Assembly: GCA_025594325.1 (NCBI GenBank)
Contig: JANHCV010000003.1
Coordinates: forward strand, 1,550,001-1,614,000
DNA: 64,000 bases
Direction of reading: 5' to 3'
Origin: Blastocladiella emersonii ATCC 22665
Lineage: Eukaryota; Fungi; Blastocladiomycota
Made by a program: the position numbers and the translations under genes
The notes under the pieces: model-generated
Told to the model about the DNA's origin: nothing
The model's input: only the letters and a program-made list of their open reading frames with translations
Database searches by the model: none
In this document: one piece after another, positions 50,857 to 57,445 of the stretch
Position numbering within the stretch: the stretch's first letter is position 1
Layout: the number at the start of each line of letters is the position of its first letter

Positions 50857-53394
50857 ATGATCTCCGCCGCACAGCCTCCGCCACCGCAATCCCTGCCGCC
50901 CGGCGTGCACGTCGACCCGGGCCGCCGCAGACGCAGGCGCCCGTCGCTCGTCGCGGCCATTGCCAACGCGACCAAGCGCGCTCGCAAGTGGTCTGCGTCG
51001 TCCTCGTCATTGACCGACGGTCCTGTCGCCGTCACTCTGCACCCCGACCCGCTCGACGCTGTGGCGGGTGAGAGCGAGACGCTCGACCCTGCCGCTGCCG
51101 CTGCTGCCGAGCCGGCGACCACCGAGAGTGCTGCCGCCGAACCTGCGACCGCCGATGCTGCTGCTGCTGCTGCTGCGCCACCCTCCCTTCCTCGACCACG
51201 CGTCAACCTGCAGCACCCGGCCGTGACCGCCGCCCTGTTCCGCTCCATCGCCACCCCGCCTCCCGCAACACCGCACACCCGCCGCGCCGTCCCCGCGGTC
51301 CTGCGTGACCTGCACTTCCGCCTCAAGCTGCGCGCCTGGACCCGCCGCCACGCCAAGCGGTTCGCCGGGCTGACGCGCCACGCCATGACCATCCACACGC
51401 GCACGGGGCCCGACGCTTTGGCGATTCTGTGGCTGGCGCAGGCCCGGTGGGAGGCCGTTGCCGCTGCCGCCCTCGATCGGCCCGCTGCGACCCAACTCGG
51501 CGAGTTCCGCGAGGCCTTCGGGACGTGGCTCGGCGCGCTGGCGCGGCTCGTCCACACGCCGCTGTACCAGGCACTCGCGGGGACCGGGCTCGCGCTCAAC
51601 CGCATGGCCGCGCTGCGCCCGCTCGTCCCGCCGACCGACCTGCGCCACCTGCACCTCCTCGCCGAACCCACGGTTCTCGCCGCGCTGTTTCTTGCGGCGG
51701 CAGCTGATGCTGTGGGCGACAGCGACGACGACGAGCTCGGGTTCCAGGCCGGCGGGTGGTCGGCCGACGACGTAGCTCACCTCGTCCCGCCCGCGCGCCG
51801 CCTCGTCGCTGCTCTCGCGGGTTTGCGCGACGCCATCACGCAGCTCGTTCACGAGTGGGTCGCGTCAGGGCCGAACCCGCCCATCGCGTTCTGGGACTCG
51901 ACGCTCGCCACGTCCGCGCACCTCCTCGGGCCCGCCCTCGACCACCTCGTCCGCGAGTACACGGCCTTCGAGCTCGCGTACGTCACGCGGCTCGACGCGG
52001 GACTCTCGAACGCTGTCGCCGAGTCCGCTGAGACGTCGCCCGCTGTGTCGCCGCCGCCATCGGTCGCCGTGCCCGAGACGCCGGCGCGGTCAGAGTCGGT
52101 CCGCGGGTGGGCGCGACTTCGGCGCACCTTCTCGCGGTCGCTGAACCGCTCGGCGTCTTCCTCGGCTGCGTCGTCGTCCATGGCGCGGTCTTCCTCCGTG
52201 TTCGCCTCCTCTTCTCTCGCGGCAACGACGCCGCCGGCCGACCCGAACCGCACGCCGACCCCCACCGCGACCCTGTCCCTCCCCGCCGACGCCGACCCGT
52301 TCGCCTCGCACTCTGGCACCGGCACCTTCAGCGCGCGGTGGCTCGCGACCATGGAGACGTACAACCCTCACGCCCACGCCCTGTCCCTCGCGCCCTCCCC
52401 CGTCCTCGCAGACCCCGTCCGCGCCGAACGGTCCGCGCTGCAGGTCCTGCTGCACTCGGCGCTCGACTGGCTCGCCGTACACCGCCCCGAGACGTACGCG
52501 GGTGCCCTCGACATGGAGCCCGCGCACCTGCTCGCGCTGCCCCGACTCGCCATGTGGTGGACCGCCGTCGACGCGTTCAAGCCCAAGGTGCTCGCGGCCG
52601 AGGCCGACGTGGCCGTCGCGTGGTTCGACGCCCAGGCGGACGATCTCGACGCGATTGCCGAGGTTCTCGCGGATCTCAGGGGCGCGAGTGGCGGCGGGGC
52701 AGGGGATGTGGTCGCCGACGTGGCGAACGCGGTCCTCGCTGTCAGCGGTGTCGATGACGAAGAGGAGATGACCGCGGCCGTGGCCACGTCGTTGTCGTCG
52801 CTGCTCTCGACCGCGTCCACCACCGACACGACCGAGTGCCGCGACCACGCCCGCGCCGTGACCGCGCTCCACCCCCTCCTCCTCCGCCGCCTTCACCGCC
52901 GCCCCGGCGGCGACGCGACGCCAAAACGCCTCCCGCGGCACCACGGGCGGAGCCACTCGTGGCACCCACCAAGCCTGACCCTGCCCCCTCCCCTGCCCTC
53001 CCTCCGTGCCGCCGGCGACGCGACCCCAGCGCACGCCGACCACGACGTGCCGCAGTACTGCATCGCGTGCCACGGCCGCCGCGCGCGCGTCGCGTACGCG
53101 GCGCGGCTCGCGTGTGCGGTCGGTGACCGGCTGCGCCCGCGCGGCATGGTCACGCAGGCCATGGCCGAGGTGCTGGCCGTTGTCGCGCAAGTCCCGCCCC
53201 CGCTACAGGTCGCGGGCGAAGGGGAAGGTGCGGGCCGGCGCGTCGTGTGGACGCGGACCTACGCGCAGGCGTACGCGGACCGGTTCGGGGTCGCTGTGGA
53301 TCCGCGCGCGGCGACGGCGGTTGCGGCGGCGGCGACGAGGAGAGTGGGGCGGAGCAGCGCGCCCGGGTGGGTCATCAGTGTTCCCTCGATCTGA
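50857..53394 (+). CDS. Hypothetical protein of about 845 aa, helical and low-complexity, no recognised domain
   Basis: Long ORF with strong GC3 bias; the start codon is uncertain. Confidence 0.65.
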   Translation: MISAAQPPPPQSLPPGVHVDPGRRRRRRPSLVAAIANATKRARKWSASSSSLTDGPVAVTLHPDPLDAVAGESETLDPAAAAAAEPATTESAAAEPATADAAAAAAAPPSLPRPRVNLQHPAVTAALFRSIATPPPATPHTRRAVPAVLRDLHFRLKLRAWTRRHAKRFAGLTRHAMTIHTRTGPDALAILWLAQARWEAVAAAALDRPAATQLGEFREAFGTWLGALARLVHTPLYQALAGTGLALNRMAALRPLVPPTDLRHLHLLAEPTVLAALFLAAAADAVGDSDDDELGFQAGGWSADDVAHLVPPARRLVAALAGLRDAITQLVHEWVASGPNPPIAFWDSTLATSAHLLGPALDHLVREYTAFELAYVTRLDAGLSNAVAESAETSPAVSPPPSVAVPETPARSESVRGWARLRRTFSRSLNRSASSSAASSSMARSSSVFASSSLAATTPPADPNRTPTPTATLSLPADADPFASHSGTGTFSARWLATMETYNPHAHALSLAPSPVLADPVRAERSALQVLLHSALDWLAVHRPETYAGALDMEPAHLLALPRLAMWWTAVDAFKPKVLAAEADVAVAWFDAQADDLDAIAEVLADLRGASGGGAGDVVADVANAVLAVSGVDDEEEMTAAVATSLSSLLSTASTTDTTECRDHARAVTALHPLLLRRLHRRPGGDATPKRLPRHHGRSHSWHPPSLTLPPPLPSLRAAGDATPAHADHDVPQYCIACHGRRARVAYAARLACAVGDRLRPRGMVTQAMAEVLAVVAQVPPPLQVAGEGEGAGRRVVWTRTYAQAYADRFGVAVDPRAATAVAAAATRRVGRSSAPGWVISVPSI

Positions 53395-53500: not shown

Positions 53501-55721
53501 TCACGGCGTCTGCACGAGCGCCTCGATGTCCTGGTCCGAGTACCCGAGGAGGTACAGGACGGACGCGAGCGACTTCTGGTTGATCCGCGTGCGGGCGCGC
53601 TCCTGGACCTTGGGCTTGGCGTTGAACGCGATCCCGAGCCCAGCGGCCGCGAGCATCCAGAGGTCGTTGGCGCCGTCGCCGACGGCGATCACCTGCTCGG
53701 GCGTGATCCCCTCGGCCTGCGCGATCACCTCGAGCAGCTCGGCCTTGCGCTCGCCCGTGACGATCGGGCCGAATGTCTCGCCCGTGAGGTTGCCCGTGGC
53801 CGGGTCGACGCGCAACTGGTTCGCGAACGCGTAGTCGAGCCCGAGCTCGGCCTTGACGTAGTGCGCGAGTGGCAGGAACCCGCCCGAGATGACGGCGAGC
53901 TTGAACCCGAGCTTCTTGAGGCACCGGCACAGGTCGCGCGCGCCGGGCACGAACGAGATGCGCGCGCGCACGCGCTGCAGCACGTCGCTCGGCGTGCCGC
54001 GGAGCAGCGCCACGCGCCGGCGCAGGGACTCGGCGAAATCGATCTCGCCGCGCATCGCCGCCTCGGTGATGGCCGCGACCTGGTCCACGACGCCCGCGTC
54101 GCGCGCAATCTCGTCAATCACCTCCTGCTGGATCAGCGTGCTGTCCATGTCGAACACGACCAGCCGCTTCGACCGCCGGAACACGGTCGCCTCCTGCAGC
54201 GCCACGTCGGTCCCGTACGGCGCCGAGAGGGCGAACAGGTCGCTGCGGAACGCGTCCGTGTCGGCGTCGCGCGGTACCGAGAGCTGGTAGTCGATACACG
54301 TCAGCGCCGATGTACCGGCGCCCGTAGTCGCGGTGCTGTTGAGCCGGCCCATGCGCTCGACCGAGATGCGGTACCGCAGCAGCAGGCGCGTGAACGTGTG
54401 CAGGAACGCGGGCGCTAGCCCCGCCTGATTCAGCACCGTGGCCGTGTACTTGGTCCGGTTGTTGTACGGCGCGTCCTCGAGACTCGGCGGCAGCGGCGTG
54501 TCCGGGTCCTGCGCGTCGAACAGCAGCGTCGCGTTCCACCGTTTTGCGGCCGCCGTCAGCTCCTGCACGAACACCCCGTCGAGCGCGTCCGCCGCCGCAC
54601 CGCCCGCGGGAAGCTGCACGCGCACGGCAAACGTCACCTGGTGGTGCAGGCGCGAGAAGGAGAAATCTTCCATCGTCAGACCGGCCTTGGCGATCACCTC
54701 GAGCAGCGCCGCCGTGATGTCGGTGCCGTGCGGGCCCGACAGCGTGATCAGCACGCGCTGGCCGGGGAGCAGCGCCGTCGGCGGGAACCACGACGTCGGC
54801 GTCTTGCCCTCGCGCAGCAGCGGCAGGGACACGGACGCGCGGCGCTCGCCGTTCGGAAGCACCGTGGAGCTGCTGTGGTCGCTCTTGGTCGGCGACGTGG
54901 GCGCGTCAAGGGACGCAGCCGTCGCGGTCCCGTTCGCCGCCACCTCGCCGTTGGCCGCCTCGGTCGCCGCACCGCTAGCGCCCGAAGCCAGCGGCTGGAT
55001 CATGTTGGACCCGAGCTGCTGCCCGCGCGCGGGGCGGAGCCGGTTGAGCCACCCTGCGGGCGACGGCGTGAGCTCGTCGAGCGACGCGACGACGGCCTTG
55101 GCGACGAGCGACGCCTTGACGGCCGACAGCCGCGAGCTGGTGCGCACGAACCGGTGGGTGCGCGCCACGCGCGTCAGGTACGTCTCGGAGACGTGGCCGC
55201 CGAGCCCGGCGAACTTGTCGTGCTTCTTGAGGATTTTGGTCAGCGCCGTCAGGTTCAGCAGGGCAAACTGCTGCAGGCGGACGATATCGGCACGGACCGC
55301 GGCGCCGTCGGCGGCGGGACCGCCGGCCGTCAGCGCGAGAGCCGCGGCGCACACGCGGTCTTCCTCGGCCGCGTAGAAGGCCGACACGCGCAGGACCTGG
55401 TCGTCGAGGTCGGCGAAGAAGACCTTGGTCTAGTATTACGGGGTAAGCGGCCGTCAGCATTCATTCCATAACGATCGGCGAATGAGTGCAGCATACGGCG
55501 ATGGCGAGTGCGTTGAGCCGCTCCGAGGCGAGCAGCGCCACCGCGGCGTTGCTGCCGCCGTCGACGGGGTCGGGCAGCGCGCCGGCGATGGAGCGCAGGC
55601 TGTGCGGCATCAGCTGCGTCTTGAGGTGCGTCTTGAGCTTGACGTAGTCGAGGAAGGCGCCGGCGTGGTACGGCGACGCAAAGTCGCCCTGGTGCGCCAG
55701 GAACGTGTTGCCGAACTTCAT
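53501..55721 (-). CDS. SER2: SPX-ACT-ACT-HAD phosphoserine phosphatase fusion
   Basis: Exon 1 55721-55497 (75 codons), intron 55496-55430, exon 2 55429-53501. SPX signatures MKFG, LDYVKLK and LNLTALTKILKKHDK; two ACT-like domains; HAD motifs FDMDSTLIQQEVIDE, ISGGF, K and GDGANDL. Confidence 0.92.
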
Positions 55722-56227
55722 GGCGAGTTGAGGTTGATACGTTGCAATGTGCGATTAGCGGGTGCGAAGAGAGAGGAGGGAGCGATGGGCCGCTCGCCGC
55801 GAACGAGCGAAGCCGGCGAGCGAAACGCGGACGACTCGAAATCACGTGGGGCTGCAGCTCCAGCCCTCGCCTCGGCGAGGACCGGGTCTGCTTTTGGCGA
55901 CGAGGATGATTGATAGCGCTCTGATCCGATGTGATCCGAGATCCGAGGGACCGGGGATTGAAGTGACCGGCGCTCACGTGCAGATGAGAGACGCGAACAT
56001 GAGGACGTCGACCAAACCCCTTCCCCTGGCCAAGTTTCAGGCACGAGCAACATCGCTGAGGTGTCTCCCAGATCGCAAGCACCGAGCGCGGCCTCGCCAT
56101 CGAACCAGCTCCAGCCCTCGTCATCGAGGAGCTACAACTCTCGCCCTCGAACAAGCACTCGGTTTGACCAACCCTCCATGTAGCACATGAATCTAGCTCA
56201 CTGAATCTATAAAACAACGCAATCCTC

Positions 56228-57445
56228 ATGGATCCGTCCCTGCAGACCTTATCAGTCGGCTTGTCGATCGGCAGTTGCTGCTTGGCGGCGGCCGTCGCTG
56301 CTTCGCTCCTTCGACGTACCTTCCCATCCTCGTTTGGAACATTCGTTGCTGCCGATTCAGCACTGCGATACATGACAACACGTTGCCGCCTGCTCTTTAC
56401 CGCGTCTGTGCTCGTGCTGTTCAACAGTATCAACAGCGCCATCCACTTTGGGATGTTCACGAACGCGACGTCGGTTGCACCCTACTTCTGGTTTCGCGTC
56501 GTGCGCATGGTGACGGTTCTGTGCACGGGGCCAATTGTGACCTTGGCCGTCGCCCAGCGATGTGCTTTCGTGGTCATGCGCCGCCCAGAATCTCGCAAGC
56601 GGCTTCTCCGAGTCGTCGCCGTCGTGTGCGCGCTGGTCACGGCCGCGATCCAGCTCGCGGCAGGGATCACGATTGCGCGACTCTGGCAGCTGAATGACCT
56701 CGTCCGGTGGCGGGACTCCTCGAACTACGATAGCTGGGCCCTCATTTTTCTCGCGGTGCTTCCAGTCATCACGCTGGGCGGGAGCGCGTGGTCACTCTGG
56801 CGAGCGTTCCATGCGCCCGAAGCAATCTCGAGCAGCATCCCAGCGATGTCAAGTGTGGCGAGGCTCCAGGCATCGGCCGATGTACTTCAATCGCCTGCTC
56901 CAGCGCATCCTTCAACTTCACGCTTCGATGCACCGAGCAGACCACCGGCAACCTCCCGTGGCGCGACAAGTTTCTCGTTTGCCGCTTTATTCCGTTCTCG
57001 GAGCGACCTCAAGTGCCTCGAGGCGTCTAATGTCAAGCTCAACACCACCCTCGCCTCGAACGGCGTCAGTGCGACTTCAAGTCGGGTGCATTACAGCCTG
57101 AACGCAACTTTCAAACTCTACACGATCGTCATCTTCCTCGGCTGGATCGCCGTGCTTTTCGTGTCCTCACCAGCTTACCGCGGCAGCATCAAGTACGAGA
57201 TCATCATGGACTACTTTTCATGCGGAGCGATCCTCGTCGAAAGCCTGTTCGAGCGCCTCGTCAAGTTCACCCACGCGTTGAATCGCGACCAGCGGGGCCA
57301 CAGCGGTCAGTTTTTGGCCACGGAAGCTCCAGGAAGTGTTGTCCAGCTTCCGTGCAAGACGCTTGGCGTTCGTTCGCAAGGGCCGGGCATCACGAGCGAG
57401 GCGTCGTTTGTCGGTGTATTTCATGAATGGGATTCTCGTTTATGA
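56228..57445 (+). CDS. Orphan 7TM GPCR-like protein, copy 1
   Basis: Intronless 405 aa with five hydrophobic helices, a long Ser/Pro-rich loop, two more helices and a polar tail ending EWDSRL. Confidence 0.75.
   Translation: MDPSLQTLSVGLSIGSCCLAAAVAASLLRRTFPSSFGTFVAADSALRYMTTRCRLLFTASVLVLFNSINSAIHFGMFTNATSVAPYFWFRVVRMVTVLCTGPIVTLAVAQRCAFVVMRRPESRKRLLRVVAVVCALVTAAIQLAAGITIARLWQLNDLVRWRDSSNYDSWALIFLAVLPVITLGGSAWSLWRAFHAPEAISSSIPAMSSVARLQASADVLQSPAPAHPSTSRFDAPSRPPATSRGATSFSFAALFRSRSDLKCLEASNVKLNTTLASNGVSATSSRVHYSLNATFKLYTIVIFLGWIAVLFVSSPAYRGSIKYEIIMDYFSCGAILVESLFERLVKFTHALNRDQRGHSGQFLATEAPGSVVQLPCKTLGVRSQGPGITSEASFVGVFHEWDSRL

What the first reader, a model, noticed from the sequence alone, without database searches (positions are those of the whole stretch)
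53501..55721. SPX domain fused to an ACT-ACT phosphoserine phosphatase: candidate inositol-pyrophosphate-controlled serine synthesis enzyme
Seen: one 67-nt GT-AG intron (55496-55430) joins a 75-codon exon beginning MKFG...LDYVKLK to an exon containing LNLTALTKILKKHDK, a linker, two ACT-like domains and a complete HAD SerB catalytic domain. Established: SPX domains bind InsP6/PP-InsPs through the YxxxK and K-x-x-K-K-x-x-K clusters, both intact here. The well-studied fungal SPX fusions are VTC subunits, Pho81, Pho87/90/91, Syg1 and Gde1. Tandem ACT domains in SerB enzymes (e.g. mycobacterial SerB2) mediate serine feedback. Inference: a two-input enzyme that couples phosphate status (PP-InsP) and serine level to phosphate release from phosphoserine. 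I know of no characterised SPX-SerB enzyme. Two CACGTG boxes (55843-55848, 55975-55980) lie upstream, but that motif is common in promoters here.
Basis: partly seen in the sequence, partly recalled or inferred. Interest (0 to 1): 0.85.

Follow-up and report, generated by a model that had tools for sequence, protein, structure and literature searches.

The report
SPX sensor fused to phosphoserine phosphatase
This Blastocladiella gene encodes the last enzyme of serine synthesis fused to an SPX domain, the sensor that reads cellular phosphate status in eukaryotes; the fusion is old, widespread in early-diverging fungi, missing from model yeasts, and apparently never studied.

Summary
The gene lies on the minus strand at 53501-55721 with one 67-nt GT-AG intron (55430-55496). 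It encodes 717 aa, identical to the annotated Blastocladiella emersonii ATCC 22665 'phosphoserine phosphatase'.

The domains are SPX (1-206), a disordered linker, two ACT domains and a SerB-type HAD phosphatase. All pass curated thresholds. The SPX-enzyme junction lies inside one uninterrupted exon, so the fusion does not depend on the intron.

All six inositol-phosphate-binding residues defined in yeast Vtc4 are present, and they are invariant or conservatively basic in 56 orthologues. The catalytic and substrate-binding residues are also invariant.

The fusion is not peculiar to this genome. It occurs in Blastocladiomycota, chytrids, Neocallimastigomycota, Mucoromycota, Zoopagomycota, two early Ascomycota and a nucleariid. 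It was lost secondarily in Gigasporaceae. S. cerevisiae and S. pombe PSP lack both SPX and ACT1.

Nine literature searches found no description of it.

Best reading: a serine-pathway phosphatase whose activity is set by inositol pyrophosphate binding as well as by serine. The direction of that control is unknown. No RNA data were available for this organism, and no ligand binding or activity was tested. This is a new variant of a known kind, of moderately high interest.

The parts
53501..55721 (-). Whole coding region of the SPX-ACT-ACT-SerB gene (two exons, 717 aa plus stop)
   Evidence: the spliced translation equals the annotated protein P0001.
55497..55721 (-). Exon 1: SPX residues 1-75 (MKFG start, helices alpha1-alpha2 with Y26 and K30, start of alpha3)
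   Evidence: Y26 and K30 are present in 55/55 aligned orthologues.
55430..55496 (-). 67-nt GT-AG intron with a CTGAC branch-like site; it holds an in-frame stop if retained
   Evidence: GC 0.51 against about 0.70 in the exons. The junction is gap-free against orthologues. It is present in the DNA contigs. No RNA evidence.
55037..55429 (-). Exon 2 part of the SPX domain (residues 76-206, helices alpha3-alpha6), including LNLTALTKILKKHDK
   Evidence: Pfam SPX. Profile A2 against PDB SPX structures, E 2e-21. AF2 model with pLDDT 92.7 whose first 44 PDB matches are all SPX domains.
55214..55237 (-). KILKKHDK (K140, K143, K144, K147): the lysine surface cluster and one residue of the phosphate-binding cluster
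   Evidence: Mapped to Vtc4 K129/K132/K133/K136 through the profile alignment and PMC9911596. K140, K143 and K144 are 56/56; position 147 is K or R in 56/56.
54767..55036 (-). Low-complexity linker (residues 207-296), predicted disordered. It contains RRASVS (54827-54844) and the conserved WFPP motif (54779-54790)
   Evidence: pLDDT is below 50 for residues 210-293. Mean column conservation is 0.18. RRxS is conserved only in Blastocladiomycota.
54509..54766 (-). ACT1 domain (residues 297-382)
   Evidence: Pfam ACT_6, 34 bits. Aligned to ACT1 of M. avium SerB2.
54185..54463 (-). ACT2 domain (residues 398-490)
   Evidence: Aligned to ACT2 of M. avium SerB2. It is also the N-terminal part that S. 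cerevisiae Ser2 retains.
53510..54175 (-). HAD-IB phosphoserine phosphatase domain (residues 494-715) with DMDST 502-506, SGG 590, K637 and GDGAND 659-664
   Evidence: TIGR00338, 269 bits. PDB hits to SerB/PSP structures. The motifs are invariant in 56 sequences.
55722..56227 (.). Upstream intergenic region shared with a divergently oriented 7TM-like gene; holds the two CACGTG boxes (55843-55848, 55975-55980)
   Evidence: The motif is not enriched in the window.

Best explanation
The locus encodes one polypeptide. An N-terminal SPX domain is tethered by a roughly 90-residue disordered linker to a mycobacterial SerB2-type phosphoserine phosphatase (ACT1-ACT2-HAD).

Shown here: the gene structure, the domain identities, the invariance of the catalytic and phosphoserine-recognising residues, the conservation of all six residues that bind InsP6/PP-InsP in other SPX domains, and vertical inheritance of the fusion across Holomycota.

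Inferred: the enzyme carries out the last, phosphate-releasing step of serine synthesis. Its activity responds to two signals. L-serine acts through the ACT pair, as in SerB2. Inositol pyrophosphates, the eukaryotic read-out of cytosolic phosphate, act through SPX.

The most likely physical mechanism is that ligand binding changes SPX-SPX or SPX-enzyme contacts. That would shift the oligomer equilibrium that already controls SerB2-type enzymes.

The direction is not known. By the logic of other SPX proteins (high PP-InsP favours processes that lower cytosolic Pi), I lean slightly towards restraint at high PP-InsP and release under phosphate shortage.
For: Gene model: it is identical to the annotated protein, and the SPX-enzyme junction lies within a single open exon.

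SPX identity: Pfam 48.9 bits. The family profile hits rice SPX2 and SPX1, C. thermophilum and yeast Vtc4, and XPR1, with E from 2e-21 to 1e-9. The predicted fold matches only SPX structures at the top of the list.

Ligand residues: Vtc4 Y22/K26/K133 and K129/K132/K136 (PMC9911596) correspond here to Y26/K30/K144 and K140/K143/K147. They are conserved in 55-56 of 56 orthologues, while the SPX domain as a whole has a mean column conservation of only 0.46.

Enzyme: TIGR00338 equivalog, 269 bits. Full-length alignment to M. avium SerB2. D502, D504, E511, R547, S590 and GDGAND are invariant.

Inheritance: the fusion is conserved in more than 100 proteins from at least six fungal phyla plus a nucleariid transcript. 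The tree of the enzyme part follows organismal groups.

cDNA-like contigs: two contigs carry the whole fused ORF uninterrupted.

Precedents: SerB2 is regulated through oligomeric states (PMC10564941). SPX acts through homotypic contacts that PP-InsP disrupts (PMC10167327). Serine synthesis is a recognised Pi-releasing branch (PMC7864628).
Against: No RNA evidence for this organism was obtainable.

No binding or activity data exist. The full-length AF2 model gives no confident domain arrangement (pTM 0.57), so no interface is shown.

Several lineages have dispensed with SPX or let it decay, so the control is not indispensable. Gigasporaceae lack SPX. Saitoella has K30 replaced by T, and Sanchytrium has no recognisable SPX. 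The model yeasts lack both SPX and ACT1.

Whether this genome has a second, SPX-less PSP was not testable.
Confidence: 0.6

Rival explanations
1. The SPX domain still binds inositol phosphates but does not tune catalysis. It would serve to localise or scaffold the enzyme, for example by recruitment to other SPX-interacting partners or membranes. Alternatively, the protein would act as a phosphate-status-dependent phosphatase on substrates other than phosphoserine, as reported for moonlighting bacterial SerB enzymes.
For: The binding residues are conserved. M. tuberculosis SerB2 has reported effector and moonlighting activities (PMC4270767 and PMC10564941). The long flexible linker is compatible with a tethered adaptor.
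Against: The equivalog-level SerB score and the invariant phosphoserine-recognising residues point to the metabolic reaction. No targeting signal or partner was identified.
Confidence: 0.2
2. The SPX domain is an evolutionary relic. It would be kept as a structural or oligomerisation module, with no physiologically relevant ligand sensing.
For: SPX has been lost or has degenerated repeatedly without loss of the enzyme. The SPX part is much less conserved than the enzyme part, 0.46 against 0.86.
Against: Within that weakly conserved domain, the residues that contact the ligand in other SPX proteins are precisely the invariant ones, across roughly a billion years of fungal divergence. That is the signature of selection on binding.
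Confidence: 0.12
3. The fusion is an annotation artefact, or the two halves are made as separate proteins from an internal promoter, by alternative splicing or by processing in the linker.
For: There is no RNA evidence for B. emersonii. Some database homologues are short, 417-500 aa.
Against: SPX helices alpha3-alpha6, the linker and the whole enzyme sit in one uninterrupted 1929-nt exon. The same arrangement occurs in more than 100 species, in a Trinity transcript of Parvularia and in two 2-kb cDNA-like contigs. Several short homologues look like truncated gene models. The Gigasporaceae ones are real losses rather than split genes.
Confidence: 0.05

Closest known systems
Mycobacterial SerB2 (M. 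avium 3P96/5JLP; M. tuberculosis Rv3042c)
   Same: Residues 297-712 align end to end with ACT1-ACT2-PSP (E 1.7e-68, 37-38% identity). The catalytic motifs are the same. Serine-linked oligomeric regulation is documented for SerB2.
   Different: SerB2 has no SPX domain and no long N-terminal linker. It is bacterial. Serine allostery was not tested for the fungal protein.
Yeast Vtc4 (SPX fused to a catalytic TTM domain)
   Same: An N-terminal SPX domain with the same six ligand-binding residues, attached to an enzyme whose activity PP-InsP controls.
   Different: Vtc4 is a subunit of a membrane complex that makes polyphosphate. Here the partner is a soluble HAD hydrolase of amino-acid synthesis. 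Regulation is not shown here.
Fungal Gde1 (SPX + ankyrin + glycerophosphodiesterase)
   Same: It is the other SPX fusion to a soluble hydrolase acting on a phosphorylated metabolite. The CtGde1 SPX structure 5IJJ is among the best structural matches.
   Different: The catalytic fold and substrate differ, and Gde1 has no ACT domains. How SPX acts in Gde1 is itself poorly understood (my own knowledge).
S. cerevisiae Ser2 / S. pombe PSP
   Same: They are the orthologous enzyme. They superpose on residues 401-712/717 with TM 0.89 by hit.
   Different: At 309 and 298 aa, they lack SPX, the linker and ACT1. This explains why the fusion is absent from the standard yeast list of SPX proteins.

Membership tests
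SPX domain (Pfam PF03105) | Match to the family model above the curated threshold | tested here: met
   48.9 bits for residues 1-215 against a cut-off of 27.8. The family profile A2 hits solved SPX domains with E from 2e-21 to 1e-9.
SPX domain (Pfam PF03105) | Phosphate-binding cluster (Vtc4 Y22, K26, K133) and lysine surface cluster (Vtc4 K129, K132, K136) | tested here: met
   Y26, K30 and K144, and K140, K143 and K147, by profile alignment to the residues named in PMC9911596. They are conserved in 55-56 of 56 orthologues.
SPX domain (Pfam PF03105) | Helical-bundle fold with an N-terminal hairpin and two long core helices | tested here: met
   The AF2 model has pLDDT 92.7 and pTM 0.87. Its first 44 Foldseek PDB matches are all SPX domains, with TM by target up to 0.71. 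This is a prediction, not a solved structure.
SPX domain (Pfam PF03105) | Binds InsP6/PP-InsP with high affinity | not testable with these tools
   Needs ITC or MST with purified protein.
Phosphoserine phosphatase SerB (TIGR00338, HAD-IB) | Equivalog model above the curated threshold | tested here: met
   269.4 bits against a cut-off of 144.15.
Phosphoserine phosphatase SerB (TIGR00338, HAD-IB) | HAD motifs I-IV (DxDxT nucleophile, S/T, K, GDxxxD) and the cap residues that hold phosphoserine (M. jannaschii PSP E20, R56; roles recalled from knowledge) | tested here: met
   DMDST 502-506, S590, K637 and GDGAND 659-664. E511 and R547 align to MjPSP E20 and R56 (offset). All are invariant or nearly so in 56 sequences.
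Phosphoserine phosphatase SerB (TIGR00338, HAD-IB) | Hydrolyses O-phospho-L-serine | not testable with these tools
   Needs an enzyme assay or ser2 complementation.
SerB2-type ACT-ACT-PSP | Two tandem ACT domains directly preceding the PSP domain | tested here: met
   Residues 297-712 align to residues 9-399 of 3P96. Foldseek gives E 2e-33 to M. avium SerB2. ACT_6 scores 34 bits.
SerB2-type ACT-ACT-PSP | L-serine-dependent change of oligomer state and activity | not testable with these tools
   Documented only for the mycobacterial enzymes.
Described SPX fusion classes (VTC, Pho81, Pho87/90/91, Syg1/XPR1/PHO1, Gde1, SPX-RING, SPX-MFS, stand-alone SPX) | C-terminal partner is TTM/VTC, ankyrin-GDPD, SLC13 permease, EXS, RING, MFS or nothing | tested here: not met
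   The only other domains are ACT and HAD/SerB. It therefore forms a separate architecture class.

The most novel reading that the evidence does not exclude
Serine synthesis in the ancestor of fungi and nucleariids was wired directly into the inositol-pyrophosphate/SPX phosphate-signalling system, through an SPX domain on phosphoserine phosphatase. Most early-diverging fungi, including arbuscular mycorrhizal fungi and the Mucorales pathogens, still work this way. The link went unseen because the model yeasts and most Dikarya lost it. If PP-InsP really switches the enzyme, this would be the first SPX-controlled enzyme of central amino-acid metabolism. As a soluble enzyme it would also be a simple in-vitro model of SPX allostery.
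Probability: 0.45. Interest if true: 0.8.

Novelty: new variant of a known kind. Interest (0 to 1): 0.62.

Why it matters
SPX domains are the receptors of the eukaryotic phosphate-signalling pathway. All well-studied SPX proteins are transporters, polyphosphate synthase subunits, a CDK inhibitor, ubiquitin ligases or transcription-factor inhibitors.

An SPX domain conserved on a biosynthetic enzyme would extend that pathway into central carbon and amino-acid metabolism. It would act at a step that returns phosphate from a glycolytic intermediate to the free pool.

The protein is soluble and has a simple colorimetric assay. This makes it a convenient system for asking how SPX transmits ligand binding to a catalytic partner.

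It is present in ecologically and medically important fungi: Glomeromycotina, Mucorales, rumen fungi and chytrids. In these groups phosphate handling is a central trait.

Tried and rejected
1. RNA evidence for the intron and for a single transcript. No RNA run was listed. The three runs found are DNA from what is probably the source sample. They carry the intron and show no joints.

2. PDB search with the single SPX sequence. It gave only marginal E-values of 0.07-0.7. A 49-sequence profile was needed.

3. CACGTG boxes as a Pho4-type signal. There are 27 sites in the window against 33.6 expected, so this was rejected as evidence.

4. Long SerB relatives (800-1150 aa) from the representative library, suspected to be further SPX fusions. 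They have ACT, a long insert, ACT and HAD, and no SPX. One cluster includes a dinoflagellate transcript.

5. SPX-less Gigasporaceae proteins as possible split genes. No SPX-coding sequence was found within 6 kb upstream (best tblastn E above 1), and they nest inside SPX-bearing Glomeromycotina. I read this as loss, not a split.

6. Domain docking from the full-length AF2 model. pTM is 0.57, the linker is disordered, and the tool gives no coordinates or PAE. No interface could be claimed.

7. Nine literature searches and reading of two fungal phosphate reviews. No mention of an SPX-phosphoserine phosphatase was found. Subscription-only papers were not searched.

8. Mainstream Dikarya SerB sequences other than the two Swiss-Prot yeasts were not retrieved. 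'Lost in most Dikarya' therefore rests on those two, on the absence of other Dikarya among the 120 nearest relatives of the Saitoella enzyme, and on general knowledge.

Full report
**Observation**

The region was read on the minus strand.
- An ATG at 55721 opens a 75-codon exon that ends at 55497.
- A 67-nt intron follows at 55496-55430. It starts GTATGC, contains a CTGAC branch-like site and ends TAG.
- The second exon runs from 55429 to the TGA at 53503-53501, 642 codons long.

If the intron is retained, the frame stops after 86 codons, and 67 is not a multiple of three. The intron has GC 0.51, against 0.69 and 0.71 for the exons. Coding GC3 is 0.95. The spliced 717-aa product is identical, residue for residue, to a protein in the public collection named 'Phosphoserine phosphatase [Blastocladiella emersonii ATCC 22665]'.

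Only SPX residues 1-75 depend on the intron. SPX helices alpha3 to alpha6, the linker, both ACT domains and the phosphatase lie in one uninterrupted 1929-nt exon. The fusion itself is therefore not a splicing prediction.

**Domain identities**

- Pfam gives SPX at 48.9 bits for residues 1-215 (cut-off 27.8), ACT_6 at 34.2 bits (cut-off 23) and the HAD hydrolase at 92.9 bits.
- NCBIfam gives the SerB equivalog TIGR00338 at 269 bits (cut-off 144).
- Residues 297-712 align end to end with Mycobacterium avium SerB2, a solved ACT1-ACT2-PSP enzyme (E 1.7e-68). The AlphaFold2 model (mean pLDDT 81) finds the same structures first.
- The single SPX sequence is too divergent for a convincing pairwise PDB hit.
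- A profile of 49 orthologous N-termini hits rice SPX2 and SPX1, Chaetomium and yeast Vtc4, Vtc3 and human XPR1, with E from 2e-21 to about 1e-9.
- An SPX-only model (pLDDT 92.7, pTM 0.87) has SPX domains as its first 44 structural matches.
- Residues 210-293 are predicted disordered.

**Functional residues**

Guan et al. (PMC9911596) define the InsP6/PP-InsP site of Vtc4 as two clusters: a phosphate-binding cluster (Y22, K26, K133) and a lysine surface cluster (K129, K132, K136). Through the profile alignment these map to Y26, K30, K144 and K140, K143, K147 of the Blastocladiella protein.

In a 56-sequence alignment of full-length orthologues:
- Y26 and K30 are present in 55 of 55 sequences.
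- K140, K143 and K144 are present in 56 of 56.
- Position 147 is K or R in all 56.

This stands against a mean column conservation of only 0.46 for the SPX domain, compared with 0.86 for the HAD domain. Conservation in SPX is thus concentrated on the ligand site.

On the enzyme side, DMDST (502-506), S590, K637, GDGAND (659-664), and E511 and R547 are invariant or nearly so. E511 and R547 align to the residues that hold the amino and carboxylate groups of phosphoserine in the M. jannaschii enzyme; that role is recalled from my own knowledge.

**Distribution**

The 120 best homologues almost all carry SPX + ACT + HAD. They come from:
- Blastocladiomycota (Blastocladiella, Catenaria, Allomyces, Paraphysoderma)
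- Chytridiomycota (Spizellomyces, Rhizophlyctis and others)
- Neocallimastigomycota (Piromyces)
- Mucoromycota (Mucorales, Mortierellales, Endogonales, Glomeromycotina)
- Zoopagomycota and Kickxellomycotina (Syncephalis, Coemansia, Smittium), and Basidiobolus
- a Trinity transcript of the nucleariid Parvularia

A profile search of 1.84 billion representative proteins found matches that cover both halves in only about eight clusters at 50% identity. Every named one is fungal. One of these is Saitoella, an early-branching ascomycete. Saitoella has lost the K30 equivalent.

A maximum-likelihood tree of the ACT-ACT-HAD part was built from 48 rows; mainstream Dikarya were not included because I had no sequences for them. 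It gave these results:
- All Holomycota sequences fall in one clade (support 100/99).
- The main taxonomic groups are recovered.
- Three unnamed metagenomic proteins group with Parvularia (100/99).
- The SPX-less Gigasporaceae nest inside SPX-bearing Glomeromycotina (98/94).

No SPX-coding sequence lies within 6 kb upstream of the Gigaspora gene, so that case is a secondary loss.

The reviewed S. cerevisiae (309 aa) and S. pombe (298 aa) enzymes superpose only on residues 401-712/717. They lack SPX, the linker and ACT1.

The simplest history is one ancient fusion at or before the base of Holomycota, followed by vertical descent and several losses.

**Transcript evidence**

None could be obtained for B. 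emersonii. No RNA run was listed. The three runs that hold the sequence are DNA from what is probably the source sample. They contain the intron and show no joints.

There is indirect support from relatives.
- The Parvularia protein comes from a transcript assembly.
- Two Logan contigs of about 2.0 kb, from two different runs, carry the whole 650-codon fused ORF of a Mucorales-like orthologue. The ORF is uninterrupted, the flanks are about 50 nt, and one contig ends in a sequencing adapter. That is what an assembled cDNA looks like, although the library type was not verified.

**Mechanism**

Established knowledge: SPX domains are receptors for inositol pyrophosphates, whose levels report cytosolic phosphate. 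Ligand binding changes how the SPX domain interacts with a fused or partner module. In the VTC complex this happens by breaking a homotypic SPX-SPX contact (PMC10167327; PMC9911596).

SerB2-type enzymes are themselves controlled through an equilibrium of oligomers with different activities, which L-serine influences (PMC10564941).

The phosphoserine phosphatase step returns one phosphate from 3-phosphoglycerate-derived carbon to the free pool. It has been pointed out as a phosphate 'source' reaction (PMC7864628).

Putting these together, the best-supported reading is a two-input enzyme: serine through the ACT pair, and phosphate status through SPX. SPX most likely acts by shifting oligomerisation or by docking on the enzyme. 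This is inference. Nothing here shows binding, an interface or an effect.

The sign is open. The general rule for SPX proteins is that high PP-InsP promotes processes that lower cytosolic Pi. That rule predicts restraint of this Pi-releasing step when phosphate is plentiful. A growth-coupling logic, in which more serine is made for nucleotides and phospholipids when phosphate is plentiful, predicts the opposite.

**Comparison with the known, and novelty**

The protein is a member of the SPX family and of the SerB family by every sequence and fold criterion that could be tested. Its C-terminal partner matches none of the described SPX fusion classes.

Nine full-text searches and two recent reviews of fungal phosphate signalling contain no mention of an SPX-phosphoserine phosphatase.

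The architecture is nevertheless visible in public annotation, as precomputed Pfam domains on more than 100 proteins. What is new is the recognition and interpretation, not the sequence. I class it as a new variant of a known kind.

Earlier notes of this scan report SPX-RING genes and an inositol (pyro)phosphate kinase/phosphatase pair elsewhere in this genome. They fit an active PP-InsP/SPX system but were not checked here.

**Side issues**

- The linker carries RRASVS, a basic-basic-x-Ser site of the kind used by cAMP-dependent kinase. It is conserved as RRxS in Blastocladiella, Catenaria and Allomyces but not elsewhere.

Noticed in passing
window 54827-54844 (-), residues 271-276: RRASVS in the disordered linker is a basic-basic-x-Ser site of the type recognised by cAMP-dependent protein kinase. 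RRxS followed by PLLREGKT is conserved in Blastocladiella (two species), Catenaria and Allomyces, but not in other phyla. This could be a lineage-specific third input to the enzyme.
   Followed up: partly
L003:1-6000 and L004:1-3742 (Gigaspora rosea and a related assembly): Gigasporaceae phosphoserine phosphatases (Gigaspora, Dentiscutata, Racocetra; 417-430 aa) lack SPX. No SPX-coding sequence lies within 6 kb upstream, and they nest inside SPX-bearing Glomeromycotina. This is a clean secondary loss within arbuscular mycorrhizal fungi.
   Followed up: yes
P0270/P0125 (Saitoella), P0287 (Neolecta); locus L005:3001-4893: Two early-branching Ascomycota (Taphrinomycotina) keep the long N-terminal form. 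In Saitoella the alpha4 lysine cluster is intact but the K30 equivalent is Thr. The Neolecta model lacks the MKFG start and the KILKK segment, possibly through a gene-model error.
   Followed up: partly
P0132, P0135, P0137, P0139-P0141, P0143, P0148, P0151 (representative library): SerB relatives of 800-1150 aa have an N-terminal ACT domain, an insert of roughly 450 residues, then ACT_PSP_2 and HAD, with no SPX. A related 50% cluster (P0150) includes a dinoflagellate (Biecheleria) transcript. The insert was not examined.
   Followed up: no
P0163 (Sanchytrium tribonematis): The orthologue has an N-terminal extension of similar length that is rich in charged, coiled-coil-like sequence. It has no recognisable SPX motifs and sits on a very long branch in the tree.
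   Followed up: no
P0293 (Absidia cylindrospora), P0287 (Neolecta): Some database orthologues miss exactly the VFLNYTGITKILK segment of SPX helix alpha4. This looks like mis-called introns in those annotations and could make automated domain censuses undercount the fusion.
   Followed up: no
window 54779-54790 (-), residues 289-292: A WFPP motif just before ACT1 (P291 and P292 invariant, with nearby P297 and Q299 nearly so) is conserved across all phyla, even though it lies at the end of an otherwise unconserved linker. It is a candidate docking element. K180 in a late SPX helix is also invariant.
   Followed up: no
window 55722-56227: The gene shares a roughly 500-bp divergent intergenic region with the first gene of the 7TM-like array that starts at 56228. 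Downstream, it converges on the large orphan ORF that ends at 53394, leaving about 106 bp of AT-richer spacer.
   Followed up: no
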